A stretch of 59,194 bases of DNA, from the NCBI GenBank assembly GCA_002269645.1, contig NIVC01003558.1, positions 1 to 59,194 on the forward strand, written 5' to 3'. The notes beneath the pieces are model-generated. The model searched no databases. It was not told the origin of the DNA and was given only the letters and a program-made list of their open reading frames with translations. Below, in pieces: positions 2,113 to 54,351 of the stretch (position 1 is the stretch's first letter; each line of letters opens with the position of its first letter). Origin of the DNA: Macrostomum lignano. Taxonomy: Eukaryota. Made by a program: the position numbers and the translations under genes.

Positions 2113-4087
2113 TTGCAATAGTTTCAATATACTAAAAACGCCGATTAATGATCTAATAACGACCTGCAGTCAGTCCAAAAGACTCCAGGGTCTCGGGCCA
2201 ACCCTCGCTTCATACAGGCTAAGAGCATAGCAGCTCACAGAAGAGCAATAGGAGAGGCAGAAGCACGGATCAGTAGGCCGGCGGCAAAGAGATGATTTAT
2301 ATCAGACTGGCTGCTTCTGAAAATTATTGTTTTTGTGAGCAAACCTCAGCTATAGCCATGCGGGCACAGACAGACAGACAATAATAGCCATATCTGTATA
2401 TGATGCAGTGTGTGACCTCCACAGTTGGCAGAGGCCGCCCAGCCATCATCAGCTCAACCTCTCCCTGCATTGTATTCCGCTTGCTGCCCACCCAGAACCC
2501 GAAGGCCGGTAGAGACAGCGAGTGACCTGCAGCTTGACTGGCCAGACAGAGACAGACAGCAAAAGAGTTTTAGGCCTTGCCTCCTGACCTGGGTAGCCAT
2601 TTTTAGACCAAGCTCAAACTTTTGCTATCTGCTGCTGCCGCGCCTGCGGTGCAGTGCGATTCTCAAGGCGTGGCTTGGGCTTTAAGCTAGTATTCATGGT
2701 GACCCGCGGGCGTTTTGGCTGCACTGCACTGCATTATGCAGTGCGCGGCACTGTGTGCGCCCAGATCGGACAAGGTTAGCAGACAGACAAACAAACGTTT
2801 GGCAGACATAACAGCTCGAGAAGCAGTGGCTGCCTTTGCACTCCAAAGCCTTGCCAATTTTTTCTGGAATTTGCACTGACTGGAGTCATGGATGCAGATG
2901 CATTAACGTCCGATGAGGAAACTAACGCGAGCTTCGAAACAGCTAGCCCCCCCCCCCCCCCCCGACGAAGACCCTGATAGACAAGGCAACGGTCCATAAG
3001 TGCGCGCGTGTACTCCAGGATCAGTGACGAGAAGCACAGCCAATTGTCCTGGATGCACTGGACAGAAGCGAACGTCCGATCGATGTCGCACAATGAATGA
3101 ATGAGGAGTGGCCGAGGAGGTGACAGCAAAGGTCACAACTGTAAAGTGTAGTGGCGGCTGGTACCGCCGTGAGACTAATACAAATAAAGAAATTCTTCAT
3201 CTGGAAACCGAAAGTCCAGGTGAGAGTTTTCATTGTTTGAGAGACTCAGGATTCAATCAACCAATCTTAATAGAACACACCATACCTAATTGCCACTGTC
3301 ATCTCGTAGAAAATGCAAATGCAAATTAAAATAAGATACGAGTAACATAGCGACTCACACTGGCTCTGGCTCGTTTCTAGTTTGGTTCCCGCAGCCTAAA
3401 TTCCAAAGTTCACTCGCAGCGAAATCTTACACTTAAGCAGCAGTCAATATGTCAGAAAACAGTACTTGCTACAGCCTGAATGCTTGCTGCAGATAAGATG
3501 CCCTTGTTGCAGTAGTCCAAGGCTGCCAAGTCTTCCCCCCCCCCCAAAAGAACACGCAACACACACACGGCCAGAAAACATTGAGGCCTCGCTTCACTTT
3601 CAGCTGATGCCCCCATTGTAGGCCATAGGTCAACCGGGGTCACAGCAGTCAGAAAACAGAGTGCAAGATAAGCCACCCTGGCACTCACTCTCTCGCCCTG
3701 TCAAAGTTTATCTCCAGTTTGCCCAGCCAAGACCGACTTACACGGACGGGTGGAGAGAAGAGGGCGTGACCTCCTACTGAACTATTTTTCGATCAGCAAC
3801 TGCTACCAGCACCGCTAGTCAGCTGAGCAATGTTGCGGCCGAGCAAAATAGAGGCAGAAAACTGCTGTGAAATATGAAGATGAAGCAAGGTTAATTAATG
3901 CTGGAAAAGAGCGAGAGTTCGCATGGGTTCTTGACCCACTGAAGAATTGAAATAAATATTGCAAAGGTAAAAGGCCCTATTTTACCTATGTGGCGTAAGA
4001 AAAAAGTTTAATATATCTTTCTGAACTGCACATAGTAGTAAGCATAGGACACACTTATGAATTATTGTTGTATTTTATAACGGTCAA

Positions 4088-5078
4088 AATGATCGAACTG
4101 TCTCTCGTTCCGGTCATGAGGATCGAACTGTCTCTCGAACCGGTCATGAGGATCGAACTGTCTCTCGAACCGGTCATGAGGATCGAACTGTCTCTCGAAC
4201 CGGTCATAAGGATCGAACTGTCTCTCGAACCGGTCATGAGGATCGAGAGACAGTTCGAATCTCGAATATCTCGAATATATCTCGAATATCTCGAATATCT
4301 CGATACCTCGAACCGGTCATAAGGATCGGACTGTCTCAGGAACTGGTCATAAGGATCCGACTGTCTCTTGAACCAGTCATAAGGATCCGACTGTCTCTTG
4401 AACCAGTCATAAGGATCGAACTGTCTCTCGAATTGGTCATAAGGATCGGACTGTCACTCAAACCGGTCATAAGGATTAGACTGTCTCGAATTGGTCATAA
4501 GGATCCGACTGTCTCTCGAACCGGTCATGAGGATCGAGAGACAGTTCGAATCTCGAATATATCTCGAATATCTCGATACCTCGAACCGGTCATAAGGATC
4601 CGACTGTCTCTTGAACCAGTCATAAGGATCGAACTGTCTCTCGAACCGGTCATAAGGATCCGAATGTCTCTCAAACCGGTCATAAGGATCGGACTGTCTC
4701 TCAAACCGGTCATAAGGATTAGACTGTCTCTCGAACCGGTCATAAGGATCCGAATGTCTCTCAAACCGGTCATAAGGATCGGACTGTCTCTCGAACCGGT
4801 CATAAGGATTAGACTGTCTCTCGAACCAGTCATAAGGATCGAACTGTCTCTCGAACCGGTCATAAGGATCCGAATGTCTCTCGAACCGGTCATAAGGATC
4901 CGAATGTCTCTCAAACCGGTCATAAGGATCGGACTGTCTCTCGAACCGGTCATAAGGATCGACCTGTCTCTCGAACCAGTCATAAGGATCGAACTGTCTC
5001 TCGAACCGGTCATAAGGATCGGACTGTCTCTTGAACCGGTCATGAGGATCGGACTGTCTCTTGAACCGGTCATAAGTA
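4088..5078. repeat. 30-bp minisatellite (GAACCGGTCATAAGGATCGAACTGTCTCTC) with two internal inverted segments
   Basis: About 30 units. At 4243-4258 and 4534-4549 the TCGAACTGTCTCTCGA part appears as its reverse complement, followed by TCTCGAATA micro-repeats. Confidence 0.93.
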
Positions 5079-5456
5079 CCGGACAGTCCCGCATGGTCCA
5101 CATATCCAGTAAATAAACTAAACAAAAGCGTACTTTAACCAATGTTAGGCATTCAATGTTGCACTAGACAACAACAACAGGATGTCGCGTAAATTAAGTG
5201 AAGCAAAACTCACGCGATAGCCAGCTGGTTAATCATTCTATTTTGATGTCGGTATTCGAGACAGCAAGGGCGATGGGAGACGGGGAGAAAACCTGACGCC
5301 GCGGCTAGGGAAACAGTTATTACAAGACTTGACGACAAATCAGCCGCATTAACTGCGTGTTACACAAAAGATCGTCAGCAAAAAATGAGACATTGTTAAT
5401 AGCTGAATGGCGAACGAACAAAGAACTCAGTAGTTGCAGATCCCACAGCTGCTGCG

Positions 5457-7372
5457 CTACCAGTAGTTACCGTAGCCGCCCTGGTCGCCGCCCCGACCTC
5501 CGTAACCGCGACCGCCGCCTCCGCCGCCCGTGGCACCGCCGCCGCCTGTTGCCATGCTTGTCACCTGGGCCAGGGCGGCCGCCAGAACCTGCGGATTCGA
5601 GGCCAGGACGTTCACCACATCCTGATAGACCCCGGAGCCGCCAGGCGCGCCGCCCGAACCGATCTGGCCGCCGCCGGGGCCACCGCCGCCGCCGCCGCCG
5701 CCGCCGCCCATTGGCTGCCAGCCACGGCCTCGCGGTGGTCCCATCTGGTGGCCGCCACCCCGGCCGCCTCGCATCTGGCCCAGGCCGCCACCCGAAAAGC
5801 CGAGGCTCCCGCCGTGCTTCGGAATCGCGGTGCCAACGTGGACCGTAGTGCCCTCGATGTCGAAGTCCTGCCCGACCAGGCGATCGACGGTGGTTGAGTC
5901 GGCAAAGGTGACGAAGGCGAAGTTGCGGAACGGCTTGGGGATGTACACTTCCTCCACCGTGCCGTGCTGGTTAAAGAAGTCCTTCAACACCTGGCTGGTC
6001 ATCTCCTCCGTGATGCCGCCGACGAAAACGCGGCGAGGCACGCTGGCCGGGGCGGCCGGCTCGCCCTGGCTGATCGGCACCTTCACCTCGCACCAGCGGT
6101 TCTGGGCGGCAGAGCGGGGAGCAATTTGAGACAAAAAATTGGGGGCGATTCTCAATGGTAGCTGGGTGGAGGGGCAATTCTCAATGGTAGCTGGGGGGGG
6201 GCAATTCTCAATGGTAGCTGGGGGGGGCAATTCTCAATGGTAGCTGGGTGGAGGGGCAATTCTCAATGGTAGCTGGGGGGGGGGCAATTCTCAATGGTAG
6301 CTGGGGGGGGGGCAATTCTCAATGGTAGCTGGGGGGGAATTCTCAATGGTAGCTGGAGGGGGGGCAATTCTCAATGGTAGCTCAGTAGCTGGGGGGGGCA
6401 ATTCTCAATGGTAGCTGGGGGGAATTCTCAATGGTAGCTGGAGGGGGGGCAATTCTCAATGGTAGCTCAGTAGCTGGGGGGGGGCAATTCTCAATGGTAG
6501 CTGGTGGGAGGGGAAATTCTTAATGGTAGCTCAGTAGCTGGGGGGGGGCACTTCTCAATGGTAGCTGGGGGGGGGCAATTCTCAATGGTAGCTGGGGGGC
6601 GCAATTCTCAATGGTAGCTGGGGGGGGGGCAATTCTCAATGGTAGCTGGTGGAGAGGGGCAATTCTCAATGGTAGCTGGGGGGGGCAATTCTCAATGGTA
6701 GCTGGGGGGGGGCAATTCTCAATGGTAGCTGGGGGGGGCAATTCTCATTGGTAGCTGGGGGGGGGCATTCTTAATGGTTGGGGGCGATTTTTCAGCAGGC
6801 CAGGGGCCCAGAAAAAGCAGCAAAGTCCCGCGCAGTCGCACCATTATCTGATGTCTAGGGCAGGTCAGACAGTCGATCTGGGACTCGAACTCGGCAAACC
6901 GAATGAACCCGTAGCCCCGACTGCCGCCCTGCGAGTCCCGCTTGATCTGCGACATGACCAGCTCGCCGAACTTGGAGAAATAGCTCTTCAAATCCTCTTC
7001 GTTGGCTTTGTAAGGCAGGCCGAGCACAATCAGGTCTGTGCACTTTTTCCTGTCCGGCTTCTTCGGCCGGAAGTCGGGCGCGTCGCCGAGTTCCTCGTCC
7101 ACTTTGCGTTTGTTGTCCTTGGGAAAGGTGCACAAGTAGACCACGTTGCCGTTGTGACTCCAGGAGTTGAACTCCGGCGGCGGGTACAGTACACCGTCCG
7201 TGAGGCGCACTGCCCGCATGGCGCTGGTGTCCGGGTTGCGGTAGCGCAGGCCGGTGAGGCCGGGGAACTGCGCGGCCAGGGTGGACAGCAGCAGGACTCC
7301 GCCGGCCTCGGTGGGCACCTCTATCGGGTCGTCGCCCTCGTCCTCAGCAACTGGCACGTATTCGACAGCCAT
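5457..7372 (-). CDS. TARDBP: TAR DNA-binding protein 43 homolog, paralog a (2 coding exons: 7372-6842 and 6101-5457; 391 aa)
   Basis: N-terminal domain MAVEYVPVAEDEGDDPIEVPTEAGGVLLLSTLAAQFPGLTGLRYRNP matches human [55 protein letters not shown]. RRM1 DLIVLGLPYK...RGYGFIRF; RRM2 RVFVG...PKPFRNFAFVTF; Gly-rich tail. A phase-0 GT-AG intron (ATG|GTGCGA ... GCCCAG|AAC) joins HQIM to NRWCEVK, matching human HMIDGRWCDCK. Confidence 0.95.
6140..6790. repeat. Intronic minisatellite (G7-9 CAATTCTCAATGGTAGCT) in the TDP-43a intron
   Basis: About 23-25 units of 25-30 bp with variable G-run length. It fills most of the 740-bp intron. Confidence 0.93.
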
Positions 7373-7502
7373 GGCTGGTGCGATTCACTGCAAAATTGGA
7401 CAATTTCGATGGGGGAATTGCTGCCTGATTACCGCTAGTAACTAAGTGCACCTACATGCCGATACTACATATTTGTCTACTATCTATCTACCAATCGATC
7501 TA

Positions 7503-8409: not shown

Positions 8410-8995
8410 AAATCCTCAACCTTCATATTCACCACCCATATCCTCATCTTTCTATCCCCAACCATCAAACCTCAACCTTCATATGCCACACCATCATACC
8501 ACCCATCTTCATATCCCCAAACTTCATATCCCCAACCATCATACCCCCCATCTTTATATCCCCAACCCTTATATCCCCAACCTTCATATCCCCAACCTTC
8601 ATATCCCCCATCTTTATATCCTCAACCTTCATATCCCCAAACTTCATATCCCCAACCATCATACCCCCCATCTTTATATCCCCAACCCTTATATCCCCAA
8701 CCTTCATATCCCCCATCTTTATATCCTCAACCTTCATATCCCCAAACTTTATATCCCCAACCTTCATATCCCCCATCTTTATATCCTCAACCTTCATATC
8801 CCTATATTTATATCCCCAACCTTCATATCCCCATAATAATATCCCCAACCTTCATATCCCCATAATCATATCCCAAACTTTATATCCCCAACCTTCATAT
8901 CCCCATAATCATATCCCTAAACTTTATATGCCCAACCTTCATATCCCCATATTTATATCCCCAACCTTCATATCCCCATATTTATATCCCCAACC
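8410..8995. repeat. 15-bp minisatellite (CCCCAACCTTCATAT)
   Basis: About 38 units. Only 1-2 units remain at the paralogous site (about 17040-17062). It explains the YPQPS and MKVGD ORFs. Confidence 0.93.
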
Positions 8996-9118
8996 TTATT
9001 GTGAAAATTGTCTCATCGGTCAAACAGTGACCCCTCTCAGTTGCTACCCTACCTTCATCATAGCTGCATCGCAGACTCTCAACAATTCCACATAAATCCC
9101 AAACACTAAACACGTACA

Positions 9119-9600
9119 GAAAAGAAACAAATGTTTAACACGCAACGAAAAGTCATTGGCTCACACACAAGCACTAATAAAGTCAAGACAAAGGTCAAAG
9201 GTCAAAAGCTGTCTGCACCCGACGCATCAATCCAAGGCCAGGCTCAACTCAGCTCAAAGTCAGTCCCTGGCGCAGCCGGAGCAACACAGACTGACTGATA
9301 GACACAGATCGGCGCACAGGACTGCGAATTTAATTAAATCAATCTAATCAATCAGCTCATTCCAATGGGATACCTCCAGCAGGCTGGGTGCTCGGGCAGA
9401 TCTTCCTGAGCACCTGGCATCGGGTACAGGGACATCACGTGACCTGGCTCTCGGCCGCCGCTGAGCTGAAATTATGAGCTAATTTGTTTAAGTAAGAATT
9501 CACGTCATTAAAGAATAAAGATTGCTCTTGGTAGACATCTCCTAGCACTGGGACTCTGGTGCATAAAATGGGGATTCGGGTGCTTGAAGTGGGGATTCGG
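9119..9600. other. About 480-bp unique block nearly identical to 17168-17650 (part of the TDP-43 tandem duplication)
   Basis: Only about 4-5 differences by eye. Contains a 14-bp hairpin at 9383-9418. Confidence 0.85.
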
Positions 9601-11872
9601 GTGCTTGAAGTGGGGATTCGGGTGTTTGAAGTGGGGATTCGGGTGCTTGAAGTGGGGATTCGGGTGTTTGAAGTGGGGATTCGGGTGTTTGAAATGGGGA
9701 TTTGGGGTGTTTGAAATGGGGATTTGGGTGTTTGAAATGGGGATTTGAATGTTTGAAATGGGGATTCGGGTGCTTGAAATGGGGATTTGGGGTGTTTGAA
9801 GTGGGGATTTGGGTGTTTAAAATGGGGATTTGGGTGTTTGAAATGGGGATTTGGGTGTTTGAAATGGGGATTGAGATGGTTGAAATGGGGATTTGGGGTG
9901 TTTGAAATGGGGATTGAGATGATTGAAATGGGGATTAGGGTGTTTGAAATGGGGATTTGGGGTGTTTGAAATGGGGATTGAGATGGTTGAAATGGGGATT
10001 TGGGGTGTTTGAAATGGGGATTGAGATGGTTGAAATGGGGATTTGGGTATTTGAAGTGGGGATTGAGATGGTTGAAATGGGGATTTGGGTATTTGAAGTG
10101 GGGATTGAGATGGTTGAAATGGGGATTTGGGGTGTTTGAAATGGGGATTGAGATGGTTGAAATGGGGATTTGGGGTGTTTGAAATGGGGATTGAGATGGT
10201 TGAAATGGGGATTTGGGGTGTTTGAAATGGGGATTTGGGGTGTTTGAAATGGGGATTTGGGTGTTTGAAATGGGGATTAGGGTGTTTGAAATGGGGATTT
10301 GGGGTGTTTGAAATGGGGATTGAGATGGTTGAAATGGGGATTTGGGGTGTTTGAAATGGGGATTGAGATGGTTGAAATGGGGATTTGGGTGTTTGAAATG
10401 GGGATTTGGGGTGTTTGAAATGGGGATTGAGATGGTTGAAATGGGGATTTGGGGTGTTTGAAATGGGGATTGAGATGGTTGAAATGGGGATTTGGGTATT
10501 TGAAGTGGGGATTGAGATGGTTGAAATGGGGATTTGGGTATTTGAAGTGGGGATTGAGATGGTTGAAATGGGGATTTGGGGTGTTTGAAATGGGGATTGA
10601 GATGGTTGAAATGGGGATTTGGGGTGTTTGAAATGGGGATTGAGATGGTTGAAATGGGGATTTGGGGTGTTTGAAATGGGGATTGAGATGGTTGAAATGG
10701 GGATTTGGGGTGTTTGAAATGGGGATTGAGATGGTTGAAATGGGGATTAGGGTGTTTGAAATGGGGATTTGGGGTGTTTGAAATGGGGATTGAGATGGTT
10801 GAAATGGGGATTTGGGGTGTTTGAAATGGGGATTGAGATGGTTGAAATGGGGATTTGGGTATTTGAAGTGGGGATTGAGATGGTTGAAATGGGGATTTGG
10901 GTATTTGAAGTGGGGATTGAGATGGTTGAAATGGGGATTTGGGGTGTTTGAAATGGGGATTGAGATGGTTGAAATGGGGATTTGGGGTGTTTGAAATGGG
11001 GATTGAGATGGTTGAAATGGGGATTTGGGGTGTTTGAAATGGGGATTGAGATGGTTGAAATGGGGATTTGGGGTGTTTGAAATGGGGATTGAGATGGTTG
11101 AAATGGGGATTTGGGGTGTTTGAAATGGGGATTGAGATGGTTGAAATGGGGATTTGGGGTGTTTGAAATGGGGATTGAGATGGTTGAAATGGGGATTTGG
11201 GGTGTTTGAAATGGGGATTTGGGGTGTTTGAAATGGGGATTCGGGTGTTTGAAATGGGGATTTGGGTGTTTGAAATGGGGATTTGGGGTGTTTGAAATGG
11301 GGATTTGGGGTGTTTGAAATGGGGATTTGGGTGTTTGAAATGGGGATTTGGGTGTTTGAAATGGGGATTTGGGGTGTTTGAAATGGGGATTGAGATGGTT
11401 GAAATGGGGATTTGGGTATTTGAAGTGGGGGTTGAGATGGTTGAAATGGGGATTTGGGGTGTTTGAAATGGGGATTGAGATGGTTGAAATGGGGATTTGG
11501 GTATTTGAAGTGGGGGTTGAGATGGTTGAAATGGGGATTTGGGGTGTTTGAAATGGGGATTGAGATGGTTGAAATGGGGATTTGGGTATTTGAAGTGGGG
11601 GTTGAGATGGTTGAAATGGGGATTTGGGGTGTTTGAAATGGGGATTGAGATGGTTGAAATGGGGATTTGGGTATTTGAAGTGGGGGTTGAGATGGTTGAA
11701 ATGGGGATTTGGGGTGTTTGAAATGGGGATTGAGATGGTTGAAATGGGGATTTGGGGTGTTTGAAATGGGGATTGAGATGGTTGAAATGGGGATTGAGAT
11801 GGTTGAAATGGGGATTGAGATGGTTGAAATGGGGATTGAGATGGTTGAAATGGGGATTGAGATGGTTGAAAT
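9570..11872. repeat. G-rich 21/22-bp satellite (GGGATTTGGGGTGTTTGAAATG and GGGATTGAGATGGTTGAAATG) with higher-order units
   Basis: About 2.3 kb. Two monomer types alternate as ~43-bp units, with recurrent ~85-bp variants containing GGGTATTTGAAGTGGGG. Confidence 0.95.
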
Positions 11873-12198
11873 GTACTACACAACAACAACAGGATATCGC
11901 GTAAATTAATTGAAGCAAAACTCACGCGATAGCCAGCTGGTTAATCATTCTATTTGATGTCAGCATTCGGGACAGCAAGGGCGATGGGAGTCGGGGGGGG
12001 GGCACTGTCGCCAGCTTGGACTACAGATTTATTACAAGACTTGACAACAAATCAGTCGCATTGGCTTGGGTAACCAGTTCGACAATTTTGACTGCGTGCT
12101 ACACAAACATCGACAGAGAATTTTGTAATAAAATTGTTAATAGATGGATGACGAACGAACAAAGATTTTCAGTTGTTGCAGATTCCACAGCAGCTGCG

Positions 12199-15100
12199 CT
12201 ACCAGTAGTTACCGTAGCCGCCCTGGTCGCCGCCCATGGCCCCGCCGCCGCCTGTTGCCATGCTGGTCACCTGGGTCAGGGCGGCCGCCAGAACCTGCGG
12301 GTTCGAGGCCAGGACGTTCACCACATCCTGGGAGACCCCGGAGCCGCCAGGCGCGCCGCCCGAACCGATCTGGCCGCCGCCGGGGCCACCGCCGCCGCCA
12401 CCGCCGCCCATTGGCTGCCACCCACGGCCTCGCGGAGGCCCCATCTGGGCGCTGCCACCCCGGCCGCCGCGCATCTGGCGGCCACCAGGGACGCCGATGC
12501 CGCCGCCGTACTTCGGAATGACGGTGGCAACGTGGATCGTTTTGCCCTCGATGTCGAAGTCCCGCTCGACCAGGCGTTCGACGGTGCTTGAGTCGGCAAA
12601 GGTGACGAAGGCGAAGTTGCGGAACGGCTTGGGGATGTACACCTCCTCCACCGTGCCGTGTTGGCTAAAGAAGTCCTTCAACACCTCGCTGGTCATCTCC
12701 TCCGTGACGCTGCCGACGAAAACGCGGCGAGACTCGCCGACCGGGGCGGCCTGGCTGATCGGCACCTTCACCTCGCACCAGCGGTTCTGGGCGGCAGAGC
12801 GGGGGGGTGATTTGATGAGACAACAAATTGAGGGCGATTCTGAATGGTAGCTGGGGGGGGGGAGATTCTTAATGGTAGGGGCCGATTACGAATGGTGTTC
12901 TGACTCGTAAGAGTGCATTTGAATTTTTTCAATTATCCGAGGTCGGGCTCGTGGCCGACTGCCTCTTAGGATCGAATTGCATATATTTCTCACAGCGAAT
13001 AGAAGGGAAAATAGTTTAGTTTATTTAGGGCGTTATTCAATATTACTGAGGGTGACCATAGTTAAAATATAGCGCTGGCAGCCCGAACTACGGCATACCC
13101 CCCTTTTAGGAAAATAACGGTTAACAACTATCAATGAACAATAAATTGCGATGCTTTTGCAAGTGTCTGTTGCTATCGAAATTGAGTTGTCAGTTTTTTT
13201 GCAAATTTTTCCTATGGCTGATTTCGGCCAGGCATTCGTCGGACCCTTGTGCCCCTTTTTGGGGTCTCTTCGTTGGACTGGGCCACATAAGGCTCAACGG
13301 CTTGAGGTGGGCCGTTGGTGACCTAAGTTGTTGGCTCAACACGATGATCAACTTCTTCATCGGACGTACTAGTAGTAGATGATTGCTGCAGGCCCAGTTG
13401 ATTGTTGCTGGCCAGCTTGAGGGTGTCGCCCGCCAGCAGTCATGATGTGTTCCGTTCTCGGGTCATTAGGAACTTTGCCTCGGAGCACGGAGTGTCGGCA
13501 TTTGGCTTTTAGGCTACTAAGATCACCTTGCTGGAAGGTTGACACGATACGAACGCGTAATAGACGTAAAAATGATTTCAACAGGCGTCTTTCCATGCGA
13601 GGTTGACGAATATTTGTGGCGCAGCAGAACTTTCTGCAAAAAGGCAATAAATTTGGAGTGAGTCATGCGTTGGGTCCAGGCCCGAAGTGCCTTTTTCACG
13701 GTTTGCACGGTCCGTTCAGCAAGACGGTTGGACTGCAGTGAGTACGGAAGGGTCTCCATCTTCGGCGCTCCATTGGCTTCCAACCAGGACACCAAAGAGG
13801 CCGAGGTGAATTCTGCTCCGTTGTCAGACACAATCACTTGTGGGACACCGAATCGAGTAAAAACAGTACGCAAGCAGTTGATGACCTTGTTCGTGGACCG
13901 ATCTTTTGTTGGGAAAGCCTCAATATAGCCGGGAGTATGCGTCCACAACGATGAGAATGTTGCCTACCTCAGGTATGAATACCTAGTCCTTGTGAAGCCG
14001 TTGTAACGGAAAGCTCGTAGGTGGCCAAACGTCTCTTATCTTCTGTAGACGAGGTCGCAGCCGAATATAACTGGGACATTGATGCACGAACTGCTCGACA
14101 TCGCGCTGCATTCCAGGCCACTAGCAGATCTGAGCCAGTAGGTTGTAGGAACCATCTTTCTTTTTGACCCAACGACAGGCGATGAATTACTCACGCGGCC
14201 TTCAATTCTCCCAATAACGATCAGTTGCTCGAGTCTGTCCAGCTCAGCGTTGATCTGGCACTCCAGTGCAATGGGCACAGGGCGGGCTCGGCAGAATTGC
14301 GGTCTGGCTCCATCGACCAACTCCATTCGAGCCGTGACGCCCTTATTAGTGGCAGGGGTTCGACCGTAGGAGCCACGGATGTCTGGAAAATTGAGTCGGA
14401 ATCCAGCAAGTCGCGTCCCAACAAATGTAATTGTTTTGTTGAAGCGACACCCATGAGCTCGGTCGGATGGAGACGGCCTTGCATCTCGACGGTGGTGAGG
14501 AGCTTTCCTAACGTTTTGAGAGTGTGGCCATCATAGGCTTCAAGGCGCCGGTGGCACTTTGTAGCGCTGGTCGATGCAGTGACTCCCAGAGATTACTTGA
14601 TATCACGAACACAGATGTGCCTGTGTCCACTTGCATTGGAATCGCAATTTACCATCAATGAGAATATATTCAGTTGCCATGGATAGATTATGGACGAGAT
14701 CAACGTCGGTAAGATAAAGGACTTCAGAGATGTCAGAGTCGGAAGCGTCAGTCGTCGTCTTTGCATGATGAATACCTGCTGATGATCGGCACACCGATCC
14801 GAAATGATTGAGTTTGTTGCATTTGGAGCATGTCTTGCCAAAGGCAAAGGCAGGACATTTCCCAGTGGGGTGGGATTTGCCGCAGAATTTGCAATTGTCA
14901 ACACGACGTCGGTCTCTACCGAGTTTGGAAGGGCCGCCATTGTGCACTTGCTTTTATAATTTGCAAAGTGAATTTCTCCGTCTTCGAGTTGAACCGCAAT
15001 GGGCTTTTGGACTCCCGACGTTTCACGATCTCTCACAAAGGTCTTCACTTGTTCCAAATTTTGGATTTCATCAACGATCTCTGCCACATTAAGTTCCTTT

Positions 15101-16476
15101 TTTGGAGGATTACCAAAATGTGGCGCTGATGTTCGGCGTTGCACAGGCCTACGATGAGAGACAGAAGCACCATTTCTTCTTCTGTACTGATACATGTTTT
15201 GAGAGAGTCAAACTTGCAGTATGCCGCAGCCTGGCGAACACAGGAGAGAAACTTGGTGATCGACTCATTTGCGGCTTGACGTTGTGAGGAAAATTTTGTT
15301 CGTTTTGCTACCACGACGCGCTCTTTGGGTTGTAGGAAACGGAAAGTGTTGATCGCTGCCTCGATATTGCTAAGGCGCAGTCTCAATATCCTTTGGGCTT
15401 TGGAGCGAAAAGATAGGTGATTATCTCTAGAGCTGATAATCCACAGACTGCCAAGAAATTGTCTGCGATTTGTCGGGAGTCTGCTGTATCATCCCACTTC
15501 TTTGCTCGTCCCAGGGCCTCAAAGGCCTTCAACTAGGTAATTGCGCGATCCAGATCGGCCAGTTCCAAACTATCGAGTCGCAACGCCATTGTGACTCGTA
15601 AGTGTATTTGAATTTCTTGATAAACTTCAATTATCTGAGGTCGGGCTCGTGGCTGAGTGCAGCGTAGCCAGAATTGCATTCCTACGTGTATATTTCTTAC
15701 AACGAAGAGAAGGGAAAATAATTAAGGGCTTTATTCAATATTACTGCGTGACCATAGATAGTTAAAAATACCGATTCTCAATGGTAGGGAGCGATTCTCA
15801 ATGGTTGGGACCACTCTCAATGGATTGGGGCGATTCTCAACTGTTGGGTGGGAGACATTCTAAATGATTAATTGTTCAGGGGGGGGGGCGTTTTCTTAGC
15901 AGGCCAGGGGCCCAGAAAAAGCAGCAAAGTCCCGCGCAGTCGCACCATTATATGATGCTTCGGGCAGGTCAGACAGTCGATCTGGGACTCGAACTCGGCA
16001 AACCGAATGAACCCGTAGCCCCGACTGCCGCCTTCCGAGTTCCGCTTGATCTGAGACATGACCACTTCGCCGAACTTGGAGAAATAGCTCTTCAAATCCT
16101 CTTCGCTAGCTTTGAAGTGCAGGCCGAGCACAATCAGGTCTGTGCACTTTTTCCTGTCCGGCTTCTTCGGCCGGAAGTCGGGCGCGTCGCCGGATTGCTC
16201 GTCCACTTTGCGCTTGTTGTCCTTGGGAAAGGTGCACAAGTAGACCACGTTGCCGTTGTGACTCCAGGAGTTGAACTCCGGCGGCGGGTACAGTACACCG
16301 TCCGTGAGGCGCACTGCCCGCATGGCGCTGGTGTCCGGGTTGCGGTAGCGCAGGCCGGTGAGGCCGGGGAACTGCGCGGCCAGGGTGGACAGCAGCAGGA
16401 CTCCGCCGGCCTCGGTGGGCACCTCTATCGGGTCGTCGCCCTCGTCCTCAGCAACTGGCACGTATTCGACTGACAT
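12199..16476 (-). CDS. TARDBP: TDP-43 homolog, paralog b (2 coding exons: 16476-15946 and 12786-12199; 372 aa)
   Basis: Same exon structure and splice sites as paralog a (HHIM|NRWCEVK). The frame is open in both exons. RRM1 DLIVLGLHFK, RRM2 RVFVGSVTEEM, shorter Gly-rich tail ending GGYGNYW. The 3159-bp intron carries an LTR element. Confidence 0.92.
12896..15772 (-). mobile_element. Old, internally deleted Ty3/Gypsy LTR retrotransposon inside the TDP-43b intron
   Basis: Diverged direct repeats (LTRs) at about 12896-13097 and 15590-15772. PBS-like TGGCGTTGCG next to the right LTR; PPT AAAAGGGGG next to the left LTR. Fragments of gag (CKFCGKSH, CSKCNKLNHFGSVC knuckles), the RT start (IPIALECQINAELDRLE) and integrase (RFGVPQVIVSDNGAEFTS...SNRLAERTVQTVK), with stops and frameshifts. 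Confidence 0.88.
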
Positions 16477-16730: not shown

Positions 16731-17167
16731 AGGTCTGCTGTTGCCAATTAACGCCTTTGAGGGCAAACACCACAAAGGCACAGTGAAGTGCACATGTACA
16801 TTTAAAACTGTTCGGTGGCCATCAAATGAAGTCACACGGAAGTCAAGCGAGAGAGAAACAGCAATAAAGTTCATCATGTCTGTCGTGTAAACAAGCACCG
16901 GAAACAAGTCGATTAAAAAAACAGAAATATCAACGATAACAACAGCAAGCGCAACGCACAAAACTAGGCAAATACGAGAAATGAAAAGCAATTTTAGCGA
17001 GGTATAGTACAGTGTAAATTCTTTTATGATTCCCCACTTCTTTATCCCCAACCTTCATATCCCAATTTATATCATCAACATTATTTTGAAAGTTCGTCTC
17101 ATCGGTCAAACAGTGACCCGTCTCAGTTGCTACCCGTCATCCTGGGTGCATCATCATGGCTGCATGT

Positions 17168-17650
17168 ACAGAAAAGAAACAAATGTTTAACACGCAACGA
17201 AAAGTCATTGGCTCACACACAAGCACTAATAAAGTCAAGACAAAGGTCAAAGGTCAAAAGCTGTCTGCACCCGACGCATCAATCCAAGGCCAGGCTCAAC
17301 TCAGCTCAAAGTCAGTCCCTGGCGCAGCCGGAGCAACACAGACTGACTGATAGACACAGATCGGCGCACAGGACTGCGAATTTAATTAAATCAATCTAAT
17401 CAATCAGCTCATTCCAATGGGATACCTCCAGCAGGCTGGGTGCTCGGGCAGATCTTCCTGAGCACCTGGCATCGGGTACAGGGACATCACGTGACCTGGC
17501 TCTCGGCCGCCGCTGAGCATAAATTATGAGCTAATTTGTTTAAGTAAGAATTCACGTCATTAAAGAATAAAGATTGCTCTTGGTGGACATCTCCTAACAC
17601 TGGGACTCTGGTGCATAAAATGGGGATTCGGGTGCTTGAAGTGGGGACTC
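17168..17650. other. Second copy of the near-identical ~480-bp block
   Basis: Matches 9119-9600 almost base for base. Confidence 0.85.
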
Positions 17651-18225
17651 GGGTGTTTGAAATGGGGATTTGGGGTGTTTGAAATGGGGATTTGGGGGTG
17701 TTTGAAATGGGGACTCGGGTGTTTGAAATGGGGATTTGGGGTGTTTGAAATGGGGATTCGGGTGCTTGAAGTGGGGACTCGGGTGCTTGAAATGGGGATT
17801 TGGGGTGTTTGAAATGGGGATTTGAATGTTTGAAATGGGGATTCGGGTGCTTGAAATGGGGATTTGGGTGTTTGAAATGGAGATTTGGGTGTTTGAAATG
17901 GGGACTCGGGTGTTTGAAATGGGGATTTGGGGTGTTTGAAATGGGGATTCGGGGTGTTTGAAATGGGGATTTGGGGGTGTTTGAAATGGGGACTCGGGTG
18001 TTTGAAATGGGGATTCGGGGTGTTTGAAATGGGGATTTGGGGTGTTTGAAATGGGGATTTGGGTGTTTGAAATTGGGATTTGGGTGTTTGAAATGGGGAT
18101 TCGGGTGTTTGAAATGGGGATGTGAAGTGTTTGAAATGGGGATTTGGGGTGTTCGAAATGGTGACTGGGGTGTTTGAACTGGGTCTTGGGTATTTGAACT
18201 GGGGACTGAGGTGTTTAAAAATGGG
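17620..18225. repeat. G-rich 21/22-bp satellite (GGGATTTGGGGTGTTTGAAATG), shorter paralogous array
   Basis: Same monomer as the start of 9570-11872, but lacks the GAGATGGTT monomer type. Confidence 0.92.
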
Positions 18226-18420: not shown

Positions 18421-18642
18421 TCACTGGTAGTACAATTCCAAATTCATGCCGTCATGGATCTCGTAGTCCTCCAAACTGATGTGATCCTTGAATATAGTGT
18501 ACCACTTCTTCAGCACGATCTTATCCCACCTGGTGCCAGTCTGGGCGGCGATCAGCTTCTTTAGATCGCCAATGGTGTCGCTGGGATTGCATTTGATGCG
18601 CACCTTCTTGCCAAGCCGATCGTTCACCGTGATTTCAATCAT
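18421..18642 (-). CDS. UBL5: Ubiquitin-like protein 5 (Hub1), 73 aa, coding region intronless
   Basis: [73 protein letters not shown] is near-identical to human UBL5, including the C-terminal YYQ. Confidence 0.98.
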
Positions 18643-19436: not shown

Positions 19437-20162
19437 CGCCCAGCAACTGATGATCTGGGAGGCTGGCAGTGGCCCAGCAACTGAGGATCTGGGAGGCTGG
19501 CGGTGGCCCAGCAACTGAGGATCTGGGAGGCTGGCGGTGGCCCAGCAACTGAGGATCTGGGAGGCTGGCGGTGGCCCAGCAACTGAGGATCTGGGAGGCT
19601 GGCGGTGGCCCAGAAACTGAGGATCTGGGAAGCTGGCAACGGCCCAGCAACTGAGGATCTGGGAGGCTGGAGGTGGCCCAGCAACTGAGGATCTGGGAGG
19701 CTGGCAGTGACCCCCAGCATTTGAGGATCTGGGAGGCTGGCTCAGCAACTGAGGATCTGGGACGCTGGCCCAGCAACTGAGGATCTGGGAGGCTGACCCA
19801 GCATTTGAGAATCTGGGAGGCTGGCCCAGCAACTGAGGATCTGGGACGCTGGCCCAGCAACTGAGGATCTGGGACGCTGGCCCAGCAACTGAGGATCTGG
19901 GAGGCTGGCCCAGCAACTGAGGATCTGGGAAGCTGGCCCAGCAACTGAGGATCTGGGAAGCTGGCCCAGCAACTGAAGATCTGGGAAGCTGGCCCAGTAA
20001 TTGAGGGTCTGGGAGGCTGTGGCCCAGCAACAGAGGATCTGGGAGGCTGGCCCAGCAACAGAGGATCTGGAAGGCTGACCCAGCAACTGAGGATCTGGGA
20101 TGCTGGCCCAGCAACTGAGGATCTGGGAGGCTGGCCCAGCAACTGAGGATCTGGGAGGCTGA
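19437..20162. repeat. 28/34-bp minisatellite (GGCCCAGCAACTGAGGATCTGGGAGGCT[GGCGGT])
   Basis: About 24 units downstream of the SHPK stop; 34-bp units on the left, 28-bp units on the right. Confidence 0.93.
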
Positions 20163-20225: not shown

Positions 20226-21781
20226 CTAGGACTCCCCGCGCCCAGCAGCCACCCAGTCCAGGAACTGTGCCGCCAGTCCTGCCGCGCCGTCGGCCACCGC
20301 AGGCTGCTGCCGAGCTCCTCCGTCCTCCAGCACAATGGACTGGAATTGACATTCGTCAAAGCGAAGAGCAGCGGCCCGCCGCAGGACGGCATTCCTACGC
20401 AGGGCGCTGCCGGCCAGAATTATCCGATCGATGCCGGCCTGTCTGAGCGCCGCAGGCGGGCACAAACTGAGCAGGTTGTTAATCAGGCCGAGGCACACGG
20501 ATCGGTACAGCCGGCCGAGACTGCGGCAGCTGGACATGCGCAGGCCGAGCACAGAGCCGCCTTGGGTCCCGCCGCCGCATCGCTCGTCTAGCAGGGTCGG
20601 CGAGATCAAAGGATCCGGGTCGGAGGCGGACGCGGGTTCGGCTGCAAAATAGAAATGGTCATAGGAATAGCTTAGGCGCAATGGTAAATCAAGATTCGAG
20701 TGGGCTTCATGCTCACATCTTTCCAGTTCAGTTCTGTTTAAGTATTGATAATTGGCACTCGAATATCCAATTTGAGCACCCTTTGGTCACTCCTATCTCG
20801 AAGTTGGTCACTCCTATCTCGAATTTGGTCACTCCTATCTCGAATTCGGACACTCCTATCTCGAAGTTGGTCACTCCTATTTAAAATTTTGTCACTCCTG
20901 TCTTGAATTCGGACACCCACACATAACTCGACAATTTCCCCACCTGCTGATATCCCCACCTTTGAATTAATAAAACATTATTGTCACCTTCATCCGCCAG
21001 AACTTGCAACCGCTGCCAGACAGTCTCGGACGGACACCGCTGTCCGGTTAGCTGCTCTTGCCAGTCGGCCAGAGTTTGGACAAACTCGGCCAGCACGTTG
21101 CCGCCATTCAGACTGGCAGCCAGCAGGACATATCTATCTGGCGAAAAGAAGGGGAAGCAGTCGATGCCTGCGTGGTCCCTCACAGACGGCTGCTGGGGCG
21201 GCTCGCTAGTGAGGAAGCCGAGCTGCGCACTGGTGCCAAAGTTCAGAAAGGCGCGCCCGTCAAAGTCTGCCGGACCCGTTGATGTTGACGACAGCGTCGA
21301 GGGCTGCAGAGGCGCGTACACCGAATAAACAACGCACTGCAGGTCGCCAAGAGGCACCCGGACTCGACAACTGGACGGCAGCCGACCCGCCCAGGCGTGT
21401 CCGCTGGCTAGCGACGTCAGCAAAGTCGGGGACAGACAGCCGACAACGTGGCCAACCGGCGCGATGTCGGGCAGCCGCGGGCGCGGCGGCAGGCCAGCAG
21501 CCGCAAGGCTGTCGGCATCCCAGCGCTGGCCGGCCAGGTCGAAGTAGCCCCAGCTGGCGGCCAGCTGGCCGGACATGCGCACCGACCCGCTGCCGCCGAT
21601 CAGCAAGGCGGCCAGCCAGTCCATGGCGCTGCCGCAGGCGTCGAATTCGGCTAGACGGTCGGGCTGATGACGCTGCCACCAGAGCAGAGTGGCCAGACCG
21701 AACCCACTCTGGAACACGGCAGCGAGAAGGTTCTCTGTCTTTCTTTTTGTTTGCCTGTCTGTCTGTCTGTTTGTCTGTTTG

Positions 21782-21814
<33 letters not shown>

Positions 21815-21861
21815 GCATGTCTGTCTGTTTGTTTGTGTGTCTGTCTGTCTGTCTGTTTGTG

Positions 21862-21920
<59 letters not shown>

Positions 21921-21929
21921 ATGTCTGCA

Positions 21930-22002
<73 letters not shown>

Positions 22003-22073
22003 GCATGTCTGTCTGTTTGTTTGTGTGTCTGTCTGTCTGTCTGTTTGTGTGTCTGTCTGTCTGTCTGTCTGCA

Positions 22074-22108
<35 letters not shown>

Positions 22109-22109
22109 G

Positions 22110-22154
<45 letters not shown>

Positions 22155-22659
22155 GCCTCCCCCTCTTAATGTCAGTTTATGTTAGCATTTATTTGTATGT
22201 CTAAGACACCATCTATCATACCTTCGGCGCCACAACCTCTGGTCTGGACGGTGCCGGCAATGACTGGAGGAACTCGAGTGAGCACCGGCCATCCTGCCAG
22301 GTCACCAGCTCCGAGCAGGAGGCCAGCGGCTGTTCCGAGCGCCACATCGCGATGCCGTGCATCTGGCCGCACAGCAGAATGTCGGACACCCGGCCTAGCA
22401 TGTTGTCATCGCCGTCGATATGGGAGTCAATCTTGGACGCCAGATTGGAGAATGCGGCGAGAATGGAGTGCAGCGACATCACTGACTGGCGCGGGGCAGT
22501 GGACACTGGGGACGCTTCGATATTGTTGCTGCCAGAGTACAGGATGCGCCGAGTGGCTGACTCCACTAGCAACAGCTTCACTGCGGTGGTGCCAATGTCA
22601 ATGCACAGCAGCAGTGCGTCTGCACTTTTGTTAGCGGTTTGCTCAAGCCCGGCTGACAT
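20226..22659 (-). CDS. SHPK: Sedoheptulokinase (FGGY family); exons 22659-22222, 21708-20988, 20641-20226; 524 aa
   Basis: Motifs match human SHPK: [96 protein letters not shown] introns give consistent phases (0 and 1); total 1575 nt. Confidence 0.9.
20783..20915. repeat. 21-bp minisatellite (TTGGTCACTCCTATCTCGAAG) in SHPK intron 2
   Basis: About 6 units. Confidence 0.85.
21753..22155. repeat. (TCTG)n / (GACA)n tetranucleotide microsatellite in SHPK intron 1
   Basis: About 400 bp. It explains the QTDR and SVCL ORFs. Confidence 0.95.
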
Positions 22660-24109
22660 GCCAGAATTTGGGCAGCTTACAAGCGCTGAATGTTTGACAG
22701 TTGAAATATACATGTACTTGTCTATTTGTTGAAGCAACAATATGGATACATACATTTGTAATAGTATAAATGACAATATTTGAACAGTAGCAAAATATAT
22801 ATGATATGATTTTATCTTCAAAAAATCAATTAAGCTTGTTATATTGATAATTGCTAAAGGCCAATTTTTACTCAGTAATTTTTATTACTTAATATGAATA
22901 TTTCAAATTGCTTTGTACATGTAATATTGAAAGAGATTAGATTTTATAATACTTTTTAAATAATAGATACAAATTTCAAAAAGTATACAAACAGTAGCAG
23001 AGGGTCTTTAACAAATAAGCTAATAATATATTTGTTATATAATCATGGTACAAAAAGGGCCTTAGCATAATTACTTAGTAAATATAATATGGTGTTAATC
23101 ACTTTGTCAACTGCTAGCAATATCTGCTATTGACAATGACCAAGTCTAGTGGTCTTACTAATTGGTCAGTTGACAAAGTGACCAAGATCAATGGCTCCCT
23201 AGTTAATAAAATGAAACAAAATTTGAGTTAATTACTTTATGGCAAAGAAGCCTCTATGGTTGCTGTGCTCCCTAGGAAGGGACACTTGTTTAGGCAGCAT
23301 ACAAGTTTCGGGTTAAAGCCCAATTGGAAAGCAGTGAATGAATAGGAAAATGCAACATTTTTTCATTTCTATGACTGATAAATTTTTAACTAAAAGTTAT
23401 AGAAAGATACAGTTTGCATTATTCAATGCCAAACATTCAGAATCATAGGTCTCCAAGGTTAAGTTGTATTCTTTAAAAAAACTTTTTATTTTGTTAGTGT
23501 AAAAATCAATTTTTTATAACCCATTGGACAATGCAAACATAATGAAACAAATAATGAAATGATACCGACAGAAAGATTGGTTGAAGACTTTGAAAGAGAA
23601 AAGTTAATTAAAATATTTTATCATTGCAAGGAAACCCTTAAGTGATACCTTAGCAAAAGAGAGTGGAATTAACTTATCTATAGAGCAGAAAAGTGCTAGG
23701 GCATGCTATATAGAAATAGCAATTATGACTCTATAAAACAAAAGCTAAGTCTACTATGAGTATATATCAGAGCTACATTTCTTAGTTTTGACTTTTTGCA
23801 CTTCAGTGCTTCATTGCTCTTTCAGCTGTCATTCTTCACATTGACTAGATTCTTCATATACATTGTTGGAGCTAGAACTTGGCATAGTAGAATAGATCTA
23901 GACAAGCTTTGCCATATGCACATTGCTGATTAAAATGATTCACACAAGATTGTAGAATTGGCAATATAGTCTTGGCAAAGCTCAACAATATTCTCTACAG
24001 CCTTTACAGCTTATCTAGAGTACAGAGGTGTTGTTCACATGCTCAAAATTTCATAACCTTGAAAAGCACTTCCTTTTACAAACCCAAAACTTTATAAGGT
24101 TGAAATTTC

Positions 24110-54163: not shown

Positions 54164-54351
54164 TGTAGTGACTCAGACAAAATCGGAGGGTTTGCGAGTG
54201 CACGAAGAATCTTAGAAATGGGCCGACTTGCCCTGCAAGTATATTTATATATGTGAAGAGTAAGTGCGCGTGAGTCTTACGTAATACATTGCAACACGTG
54301 ACTAATAATATTTGCGCGCCAATATTGTACATCGCACTGAACTACACTACA
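54164..54351 (-). repeat. 5' LTR of the young Gypsy element
   Basis: Followed on the minus strand by the PBS TGGCG; identical by eye to 49723-49910. Confidence 0.95.

What the first reader, a model, noticed from the sequence alone, without database searches (positions are those of the whole stretch)
16110..16140. TDP-43 paralog b encodes His at the position equivalent to human P112
Seen: RRM1 RNP2 reads DLIVLGLHFK in paralog b (His codon CAC at 16119-16117) and DLIVLGLPYK in paralog a. Human is D105-LIVLGL-P112-W113-K. Pro (CCT) to His (CAC) needs two base changes and the next codon also changed (TAC to TTC), so a single base-call error is unlikely. Established (from memory, verify): P112H is a human TARDBP variant reported in frontotemporal dementia and reported to impair RRM1 RNA binding; W113 contacts nucleic acid. 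Inference: a duplicate TDP-43 has acquired a disease-like RRM1 and may have weakened or redirected UG-binding, acting as a neofunctionalised or modulating paralog.
Basis: partly seen in the sequence, partly recalled or inferred. Interest (0 to 1): 0.75.

Follow-up and report, generated by a model that had tools for sequence, protein, structure and literature searches.

The report
Flatworm TDP-43 duplicate carrying His112
One of two side-by-side copies of the TDP-43 gene in the flatworm Macrostomum lignano really has histidine where human TDP-43 has proline 112, but this looks like ordinary drift in a fast-evolving spare copy, at a site that varies naturally across animals.

Summary
The window is Macrostomum lignano scaffold NIVC01003558.1. 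It carries two head-to-tail TDP-43 genes on the minus strand. Copy b (16476..12199) reads DLIVLGLHFK and copy a (7372..5457) reads DLIVLGLPYK. Alignment to full-length human TDP-43 (PDB 7py2) places His120 of b on P112 and Phe121 on W113. Copy a and two more distant Macrostomum TDP-43 genes share the codons CCT TAC, so CAC TTC is derived in b. The literature recall is also right: human P112H lowers (UG)6 affinity 3- to 8-fold.

Copy b is the fast-evolving duplicate, with 14-16 derived residues against 3-5 in a, and omega about 0.8 against 0.2. It deviates at 15 of 82 near-invariant family sites, and P112H is one of these. The genome is a recent polyploid with at least four TDP-43 loci. Among 107 diverse family representatives, position 112 is Pro in only 68%. 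Salmon-louse TDP-43 naturally has His-Trp. Caenorhabditis TDP-1 has Asp-Phe and, per the literature, binds (UG)n well. Copy b is still intact, correctly spliced and supported by an RNA-seq-based annotation.

Most likely this is a tolerated change in a redundant, expressed duplicate. Interest is low.

The parts
16117..16119 (-). His codon CAC of copy b (residue 120), equivalent to human TDP-43 P112
   Evidence: Aligned to P112. Out-paralogue and copy-a codon is CCT.
16114..16116 (-). Phe codon TTC of copy b (residue 121), equivalent to human W113. The ancestral Macrostomum state is Tyr (TAC).
15946..16476 (-). Copy b coding exon 1: ATG at 16476, N-terminal domain and most of RRM1, ending ...HHIM followed by donor GTGCGA
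   Evidence: Identical to GenBank PAA50811.1 (P0121).
12787..15945 (-). Copy b intron (GT..AG, phase 0, 3.1 kb), containing a retroelement integrase fragment at 13523..13948
12199..12786 (-). Copy b coding exon 2: end of RRM1, RRM2, Gly-rich tail and stop codon. An internal donor G|GTAACT at 12212/12211 is used in the annotated transcript.
6842..7372 (-). Copy a coding exon 1, with Pro-Tyr codons CCT TAC at 7015..7010. No gene is called here in the GenBank annotation.
6102..6841 (-). Copy a intron at the same position and phase as in b, almost entirely a 28-bp tandem repeat
5457..6101 (-). Copy a coding exon 2 including the stop codon
9374..9468 (-). Short exon between b and a. In the GenBank model it is spliced between b's internal donor and the acceptor at 7388/7387 in front of a's ATG. 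It is probably part of a's 5' untranslated first exon.
9113..9498 (-). Block upstream of copy a that is essentially identical to 17165..17550 upstream of copy b (shared promoter and 5'UTR-exon region; gene-conversion-like tract)
17165..17550 (-). Counterpart of the identical upstream block, in front of copy b
9566..11873 (.). 21-bp satellite (AAATGGGGATTGGGGTGTTTG, about 108 copies) between b and a. The junction of the tandem duplication lies at about 11872/11873.
17618..18225 (.). The same 21-bp satellite (about 28 copies) upstream of copy b, marking the other end of the duplicated unit

Best explanation
The window holds a tandem duplication (unit about 6.5 kb, bounded by a 21-bp satellite) of a divergent TDP-43 gene in the recently polyploid flatworm Macrostomum lignano. 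Copy a stays closer to the ancestral sequence. Copy b is a transcribed, intact but fast-evolving duplicate under relaxed constraint. The Pro-Tyr to His-Phe change in loop 1 of RRM1 is one of several replacements that b accumulated at normally conserved positions. It is tolerated for two reasons: the genome carries at least three other TDP-43 loci, and this loop position is naturally variable in the family as long as the next residue stays aromatic, which it does. Shown: the sequence, the alignment, the polarity of the change, the rate asymmetry, ORF and splice-site integrity, and annotation from RNA-seq. Inferred: b still makes an RNA-binding TDP-43-like protein, because all RNP1/RNP2 aromatic positions are kept. 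Its UG affinity may be somewhat altered, and it has no demonstrated new function.
For: The scaffold and gene are identified as NIVC01003558.1 / PAA50811.1. Both copies have TDP-43_N plus two RRMs, and b matches human TDP-43 at E = 4e-84. Out-paralogue codons show that b is derived. A relative-rate test gives 14-16 b-derived against 3-5 a-derived residues, p = 0.004-0.04. Omega is about 0.81 [0.47-1.36] for b and about 0.25 [0.05-0.59] for a, against 0.08 between the canonical Macrostomum genes. At 82 sites that are at least 95% conserved, b deviates at 15 and a at 10; other species have a median of 0 and a maximum of 8. The b-specific deviations are P112H, Y113F, D138N, R165K, G245E and A260V. 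P0001, a b-like UniProt model annotated for M. lignano that I take to come from the earlier ML2 assembly, shares D138N, R165K, G245E and A260V. Constraint is not absent. There are no stops or frameshifts, all four coding indels are in frame, and GT-AG is kept; under neutrality the chance of staying intact is roughly 1e-2 to 3e-5. The annotation pipeline is RNA-seq based (PMC5730564). The site is naturally variable: Pro in 73 of 107 representatives, His-Trp in L. salmonis, Asp-Phe in Caenorhabditis TDP-1, and an aromatic residue at 113 in 100 of 107. TDP-1 binds (UG)n with high affinity. M. lignano is a hidden polyploid with excess paralogues (PMC10468722).
Against: Among the 121 closest homologues, mostly vertebrates and arthropods, position 112 is P 118, A 3 and H 1, so His is rare in that sample. 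In human TDP-43 the same change measurably weakens RNA binding. The N-terminal domain and the promoter/5'UTR block are kept nearly identical between a and b, and the ORF is maintained. These facts would also fit a selected, co-expressed partner protein rather than a merely tolerated spare. Omega about 0.8 cannot separate relaxation from a mix of purifying and positive selection. Expression of the His codon itself was not seen in reads.
Confidence: 0.6

Rival explanations
1. This is the first reader's idea: a neofunctionalised or modulating paralog. Copy b would be kept by selection as a TDP-43 subunit with weakened or redirected RNA binding. It would be co-expressed with copy a from a near-identical promoter and would co-assemble with it through an identical N-terminal oligomerisation domain, tuning TDP-43 activity.
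For: The ORF is maintained despite neutral divergence of 0.1-0.19. CDS nt 7-263 (N-terminal domain) are 100% identical between a and b, and about 385 bp of upstream sequence are identical. b-specific changes fall in or near RNA-binding parts of both RRMs; dN/dS in RRM2 is 1.19. Human P112H lowers (UG)6 affinity 3- to 8-fold.
Against: Nothing tested shows altered binding. All RNP aromatic positions are unchanged and the aromatic at 113 is kept. Natural His-Trp and Asp-Phe variants exist in TDP-43 proteins of other animals, and Caenorhabditis TDP-1 binds UG well. The identical tracts are explained as simply by gene conversion, or even by short-read polishing across paralogues (Pilon). Omega is not significantly above 1 in any region.
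Confidence: 0.2
2. Early pseudogenisation. Copy b is no longer needed at the protein level and is drifting. It is still intact only because little time has passed, or because gene conversion from copy a keeps repairing it.
For: The confidence interval for omega on the b lineage includes 1. Multiple hits fall at sites invariant elsewhere, such as A260V and G245E. b has lost a 12-residue Gly/Arg-rich segment and carries a transposon fragment in an enlarged intron. The annotated b transcript reads through into copy a with an altered C-terminus.
Against: There is no stop or frameshift, only in-frame indels, and the splice sites are intact. The rough probability of this under neutrality is 1e-2 to 3e-5. 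A canonical AATAAA lies 165 nt after the stop. The gene model is transcript-supported.
Confidence: 0.15
3. Assembly or polishing artefact. CACTTC in place of CCTTAC would be an error of the PacBio/Pilon assembly, for example an inserted A plus a deleted A four bases apart.
For: CCTTAC converts to CACTTC by one +A and one -A indel, the error type typical of long-read consensus (inference). The other public b-like model (P0001) skips exactly this segment. Its sequence is reproduced if the source assembly has a 1-nt indel nearby that the gene predictor avoided with an artificial intron (inference).
Against: The assembly was polished with Illumina DNA and RNA-seq reads. A frame-preserving pair of errors would be a coincidence. 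The surrounding exon carries many other b-specific substitutions, and six of b's deviations at conserved sites recur in P0001, a separately predicted b-like protein.
Confidence: 0.03

Closest known systems
Human TARDBP p.P112H (FTD-linked RRM1 variant)
   Same: His sits at the aligned loop-1 position directly after the RNP2 strand LIVLGL. Both arose by a two-base change in the codon: CCA to CAT in the family, CCT to CAC here.
   Different: The human variant is a rare heterozygous allele next to Trp113. Here the change is fixed in the assembly in one of at least four gene copies, next to Phe (ancestrally Tyr), and accompanied by other lineage-specific changes such as K145R, R197S, D138N and R165K. 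No binding or disease-like behaviour has been measured.
Lepeophtheirus salmonis TDP-43 (XP_040583315.1, P0183)
   Same: It is a natural animal TDP-43 with His at the P112 position (DLIVLGLHWQT), with the N-terminal domain and both RRMs present.
   Different: It keeps Trp113. It is annotated simply as the species' TDP-43, and it is not known here to be a recent tandem duplicate.
Caenorhabditis TDP-1 (C. nigoni representative P0249)
   Same: It has a non-proline residue followed by Phe at the two positions (DLIVLGVDFKT), so the 113-equivalent is Phe as in copy b.
   Different: It has Asp rather than His and is a single-copy orthologue. [quoted passage not shown]
Zebrafish tardbp / tardbpl duplicates (from memory, not checked here)
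   Same: Two TDP-43 genes in one genome with partial redundancy.
   Different: Those arose by the teleost genome duplication and differ mainly in the C-terminal domain and its splicing. They are not tandem copies and do not differ in RRM1 loop 1.

Membership tests
TDP-43 / TARDBP family | N-terminal TDP-43_N (ubiquitin-like oligomerisation) domain | tested here: met
   PF18694 at E = 2e-23 in both a and b. Residues 4-96 align to human N-terminal domain structures.
TDP-43 / TARDBP family | Two tandem RRMs with conserved RNP2/RNP1 aromatic residues | tested here: met
   RRM_1 matches twice. LIVLGL, (K/R)G(F/Y)GF(V/I)RF, VFVG and R(A/N)FAFVTF align to human 106-111, 145-152, 193-196 and 227-234.
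TDP-43 / TARDBP family | Gly-rich C-terminal region with the short conserved helical segment | tested here: met
   The tail is Gly-rich. NPQVLAAAL aligns with human NPAMMAAAQ, though with modest posterior support. b lacks 12 Gly/Arg-rich residues present in a.
TDP-43 / TARDBP family | Loop-1 Pro-Trp after RNP2 | tested here: not met
   b has His-Phe and a has Pro-Tyr. This is not truly defining: Pro occurs in only 73 of 107 diverse representatives and Trp in 50 of 107, while an aromatic residue occurs in 100 of 107.
TDP-43 / TARDBP family | Preferential binding of (UG)n RNA | not testable with these tools
   Needs recombinant protein.
Human P112H-type hypomorphic RRM1 | His at position 112 | tested here: met
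Human P112H-type hypomorphic RRM1 | Neighbouring Trp113, whose base stacking the His disrupts | tested here: not met
   The residue is Phe in b and was Tyr in the ancestor.
Human P112H-type hypomorphic RRM1 | Reduced (UG)6 affinity relative to the Pro form | not testable with these tools
   Only the human measurements are available.
Decaying duplicate / pseudogene | Premature stops, frameshifts or broken splice sites | tested here: not met
   The ORF of 372 codons is intact, GT-AG is kept and all indels are in frame.
Decaying duplicate / pseudogene | Omega indistinguishable from 1 on its lineage | tested here: inconclusive
   omega_b is about 0.81, bootstrap interval 0.47-1.36.

The most novel reading that the evidence does not exclude
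Copy b is a selected 'attenuator' subunit: a TDP-43 with weakened loop-1 base stacking. It would be co-expressed with copy a from a promoter kept identical by gene conversion, and would co-polymerise with it through an identical N-terminal domain. The flatworm would then tune TDP-43 activity by mixing strong and weak RNA-binding subunits, a natural counterpart of the human P112H heterozygous state without disease.
Probability: 0.1. Interest if true: 0.45.

Novelty: new member of a known kind. Interest (0 to 1): 0.17.

Why it matters
If the His-Phe loop did weaken UG binding, copy b would be a natural, tolerated version of a human dementia-linked change. It could then serve as a comparative system for asking what context makes P112H harmless. 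As the evidence stands, the finding mainly illustrates a familiar point. A residue that is pathogenic in humans can be the normal state elsewhere; here that includes salmon-louse TDP-43 and this flatworm duplicate. Recent duplicates in a polyploid genome accumulate such changes. The finding does not open a new question.

Tried and rejected
- Look-ups of the exon-1 read-through ORFs of b and a found no other contig. No independent read-level or transcript copy of the His codon could therefore be obtained.
- Neither spliced protein is in the 15-billion-protein collection as such. Only the GenBank model of b (with an alternative C-terminus) and a UniProt b-like model lacking the RNP2 segment are present.
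It would not have resolved binding strength in any case.
- Polarising synonymous differences with the out-paralogues was uninformative (2 against 2, 12 ambiguous) because dS to them exceeds 1.
- The idea that three changes within 4 nt signal a special event was rejected: P = 0.19.
- Rfam and tRNA scans of the window found nothing.
- A bacterial-type promoter scan of the shared upstream block is not meaningful for a eukaryote.
- No paper in the library links Macrostomum and TDP-43 in substance.

Full report
**What the window is.** A protein search with the spliced product of the locus returned Macrostomum lignano proteins as the only close hits. An exact look-up showed that GenBank PAA50811.1 (BOX15_Mlig007227g3, 'hypothetical protein') lies on a contig of 59,194 bp, the length of this window. 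The record is NIVC01003558.1 of assembly GCA_002269645.1, Mlig_3_7. The window is therefore a scaffold of a free-living flatworm. That species is described as a hidden polyploid with a recent whole-genome duplication and an excess of paralogues (PMC10468722).

**Anatomy.** tblastn with human TDP-43 finds two colinear sets of matches on the minus strand.
- Each copy has two coding exons joined by a phase-0 GT-AG intron at the same codon...I-M | N-R-W-C..., inside RRM1.
- Copy a is 7372..6842 plus 6101..5457, 391 aa.
- Copy b is 16476..15946 plus 12786..12199, 372 aa.
- Both score as TDP-43_N plus two RRMs in Pfam.
- Copy b matches full-length human TDP-43 (PDB 7py2_A) at E = 4e-84 across the N-terminal domain, both RRMs and the short conserved C-terminal segment.
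- Self-comparison shows a head-to-tail duplication of about 6.5 kb. Each unit starts with a 21-bp satellite (17618..18225 for b, 9566..11873 for a). The duplication junction is at about 11872/11873, directly after b's 3' UTR.

**The observation.**
- The minus strand at 16125..16109 is GGCCTGCACTTCAAAGC, and copy a at 7021..7005 is GGCCTGCCTTACAAAGC.
- In the HMMER alignment to the PDB human chain, b residues 106-122 pair without gaps with human 98-114.
- Two more distant Macrostomum TDP-43 genes both have CCT TAC at these codons, as copy a does. One is P0003 on NIVC01001280.1, the other is P0002 from a Logan transcript. His-Phe is therefore derived in b.
P112H (CCA to CAT) was found in one FTD pedigree (PMC4382926). 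It lowers (UG)6 affinity from 57 to 149 nM for RRM1 and from 9.5 to 72 nM for RRM1-RRM2. It removes the Trp113 fluorescence response to DNA and raises thermal stability. W113 stacks between two bases in 4IUF, and W113A weakens ssDNA binding from 21 to 115 nM (PMC7784771).

**Is b a live gene?**
- The GenBank protein is identical to my model of b through residue 368, including the His-Phe and the RRM1 intron junction.
- The Mlig_3_7 annotation was built from RNA-seq with StringTie/TACO, cut at experimentally found trans-splice and poly(A) sites, and ORFs were called with TransDecoder (PMC5730564). The model is therefore transcript-supported, although short reads can cross-map between a and b.
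- Copy b has no stop or frameshift. Its four coding indels relative to a are all multiples of three.
- Pairwise divergence is K = 0.05-0.37 in non-coding flanks (pooled 0.15, 0.017 indel events per site) and dS = 0.10-0.16. At these rates a neutrally drifting copy would be expected to carry one to two stops and several frameshifts. The rough probability of staying intact is 1e-2 to 3e-5.
- A canonical AATAAA lies 165 nt after b's stop.
- Copy b has therefore been under at least some selection for an open reading frame.

**How b evolves.**
- Using the out-paralogues to polarise amino-acid differences, 14-16 changes are on the b lineage and 3-5 on the a lineage, p = 0.004-0.04.
- Splitting synonymous changes equally gives omega of about 0.81 (bootstrap 0.47-1.36) for b and about 0.25 (0.05-0.59) for a. 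The canonical Macrostomum pair P0002/P0003 has 0.08.
- At 82 alignment columns that are at least 95% conserved among 118 non-Macrostomum TDP-43 proteins, P0003 deviates at 5, P0002 at 7, a at 10 and b at 15. All other species have a median of 0 and a maximum of 8.
- The deviations private to b are P112H, Y113F, D138N, R165K, G245E and A260V. a and b also differ from each other at R197 (G/S) and E246 (Q/R), and they share K145R.
- The b-like UniProt entry A0A1I8H624 (P0001), annotated for M. lignano and which I take to come from the earlier ML2 assembly, shares D138N, R165K, R197S, G245E, E246R and A260V. These are therefore not errors of one assembly.
- P0001 lacks the RNP2 segment. Its odd 'KNSAKLVMSQ' is reproduced exactly if the gene predictor placed an intron (AAAAA|GT...CCAAG|) to skip a 1-nt indel. 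This is my inference, so P0001 says nothing about the His codon.

**Gene conversion.**
- CDS nt 7-263 (the N-terminal domain) have no difference between a and b. Differences then rise to about 8% from nt 343 on, and the His codon lies in the first cluster after this boundary.
- About 385 bp upstream (a 9498..9113, b 17550..17165) are also essentially identical, whereas neighbouring non-coding sequence differs by 16-29%. This block holds the short exon 9468..9374 and its donor.
- The simplest reading is recent gene conversion. A caveat is that short-read polishing with Pilon can homogenise paralogues.
- Either way, the two copies probably share a promoter/5'UTR exon and an identical oligomerisation domain. 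This is the main fact that keeps the 'modulating partner' idea alive.

**How special is His at this site?**
- Among the 121 closest homologues, mostly vertebrates and arthropods, position 112 is P 118, A 3 and H 1 (only b). Position 113 is W 115, Y 4, F 2 and C 1. That sample is taxonomically narrow.
- An exhaustive HMMER search of 1.84 billion cluster representatives with b's exon 1 gave 107 representatives in which the N-terminal domain and RRM1 align across the site. There position 112 is P 73, S 14, A 9, N 5, D 3, H 1, T 1 and G 1. Position 113 is W 50, Y 34, F 16 and other 7.
- The other His is RefSeq 'TAR DNA-binding protein 43' of the salmon louse Lepeophtheirus salmonis (DLIVLGLHWQT), a complete TDP-43.
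- Caenorhabditis TDP-1 (C. nigoni representative) has Asp-Phe, sea-urchin paralogues have Asp-Phe and Asp-Tyr, and Artemia has Ser-Phe.
- C. elegans TDP-1 is reported to bind (UG)n with high affinity and to replace human TDP-43 in splicing assays (PMC4282642).
- The conserved requirement therefore appears to be an aromatic residue at 113, which b keeps. Proline at 112 does not appear to be required.

**Verdict on mechanism.**
- The best-supported account is an expressed, intact but relaxed tandem duplicate in a genome with at least four TDP-43 loci: a, b and two P0003-type copies. A naturally variable loop-1 position has changed along with several other conserved positions.
- By analogy with the human variant, b's RRM1 may bind UG RNA somewhat differently, but this is inference only. 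The analogy is weakened because the neighbouring residue is Phe/Tyr rather than Trp, and by the natural variants listed above.
- The rivals cannot be excluded without reads, orthologues and binding assays. I rank them clearly lower: a selected attenuator or neofunctionalised copy, early pseudogenisation, and an assembly artefact.

**Comparison with the known, and novelty.** Copy b is a member of the TDP-43 family by domain architecture and sequence. The gene is already in GenBank as a hypothetical protein, and nothing in the searchable literature discusses Macrostomum TDP-43. The His-Phe state is a new small observation about a known kind of protein, comparable to the many human-pathogenic residues that are wild type in other species. 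Interest is low.

Noticed in passing
window 12211-12212, 9374-9468, 7385-7388 (minus strand): The GenBank CDS of copy b does not end at the native stop (GNYW*). It uses a donor G|GTAACT four codons earlier, splices to a 95-nt exon at 9468..9374, and then splices to the acceptor directly in front of copy a's ATG. There a TGA (7387..7385) ends the ORF. This is a b-to-a read-through transcript giving b a 31-residue alternative tail. The same G|GTAACT donor exists at the end of copy a (about 5470).
   Followed up: partly
window 5457-7372: Copy a, the more conservative TDP-43 copy with Pro-Tyr, has no called gene in the public annotation of this scaffold, and its protein is absent from the protein collection. 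Only copy b is annotated.
   Followed up: partly
window 9113-9498 versus 17165-17550; CDS nt 7-263 of both copies: These tracts are essentially 100% identical between the two copies, while the non-coding sequence next to them differs by 16-29%. This suggests recent gene conversion, or possibly homogenisation by short-read polishing. One difference turns the acceptor CAG upstream of a (9471..9469) into ATG upstream of b.
   Followed up: partly
window 9566-11873 and 17618-18225: A 21-bp G-rich satellite (AAATGGGGATTGGGGTGTTTG; about 108 and about 28 copies) lies at the head of each duplicated unit. It may have mediated the tandem duplication by unequal exchange. It also accounts for the extreme GC skew at 10-12 kb.
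   Followed up: partly
window 6141-6778 and 13523-13948: Copy a's intron is almost entirely a 28-bp tandem repeat (GGGGGCAATTCTCAATGGTAGCTGGGGG). Copy b's intron is four times longer and contains a fragment of a retroelement integrase core domain.
   Followed up: no
L002 10001-11471 (NIVC01001280.1): The more canonical M. lignano TDP-43 gene (P0003 type, 60% identical to a/b) has its single coding intron after RRM2. Copies a and b have theirs inside RRM1. The two lineages therefore differ in gene structure as well as sequence. dS between them is saturated (above 1.2).
   Followed up: partly
copies a and b, residues equivalent to human K145, D169/G170 and R197: Both copies have Arg at the K145 acetylation site and Met-Asn in place of D169-G170. 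They have also lost Arg197 of the RRM2 RNP2 motif (Gly in a, Ser in b). The whole a/b lineage is thus an unusually divergent TDP-43.
   Followed up: partly
P0001 (UniProt A0A1I8H624): The b-like model that I take to come from the older M. lignano ML2 assembly replaces the RNP2 segment with 'NSAK'. This is reproduced by an artificial intron that skips a 1-nt indel (GAAGCTGGTC against GAAGTGGTC in b). It is likely an assembly error propagated into a UniProt sequence.
   Followed up: partly
window 50057-54180 (minus), 45281-46873 (minus), 20226-22683 (minus), 18421-18642 (minus): Other content of the scaffold: a Ty3/gypsy-type pol ORF (RT, RNase H, integrase), an amiloride-sensitive sodium channel (ASC/DEG-ENaC) ORF, an FGGY-family carbohydrate kinase gene, and a small ubiquitin-like call just upstream of copy b.
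   Followed up: no
window 1250-2088, 4081-5088, 8437-8997, 19438-19993: Several further tandem-repeat arrays with periods of 5-30 bp (for example TTCCA-type and a 30-mer) flank the TDP-43 pair. AT-rich stretches (26-31% GC) lie at 24-30 kb and 34-40 kb.
   Followed up: no
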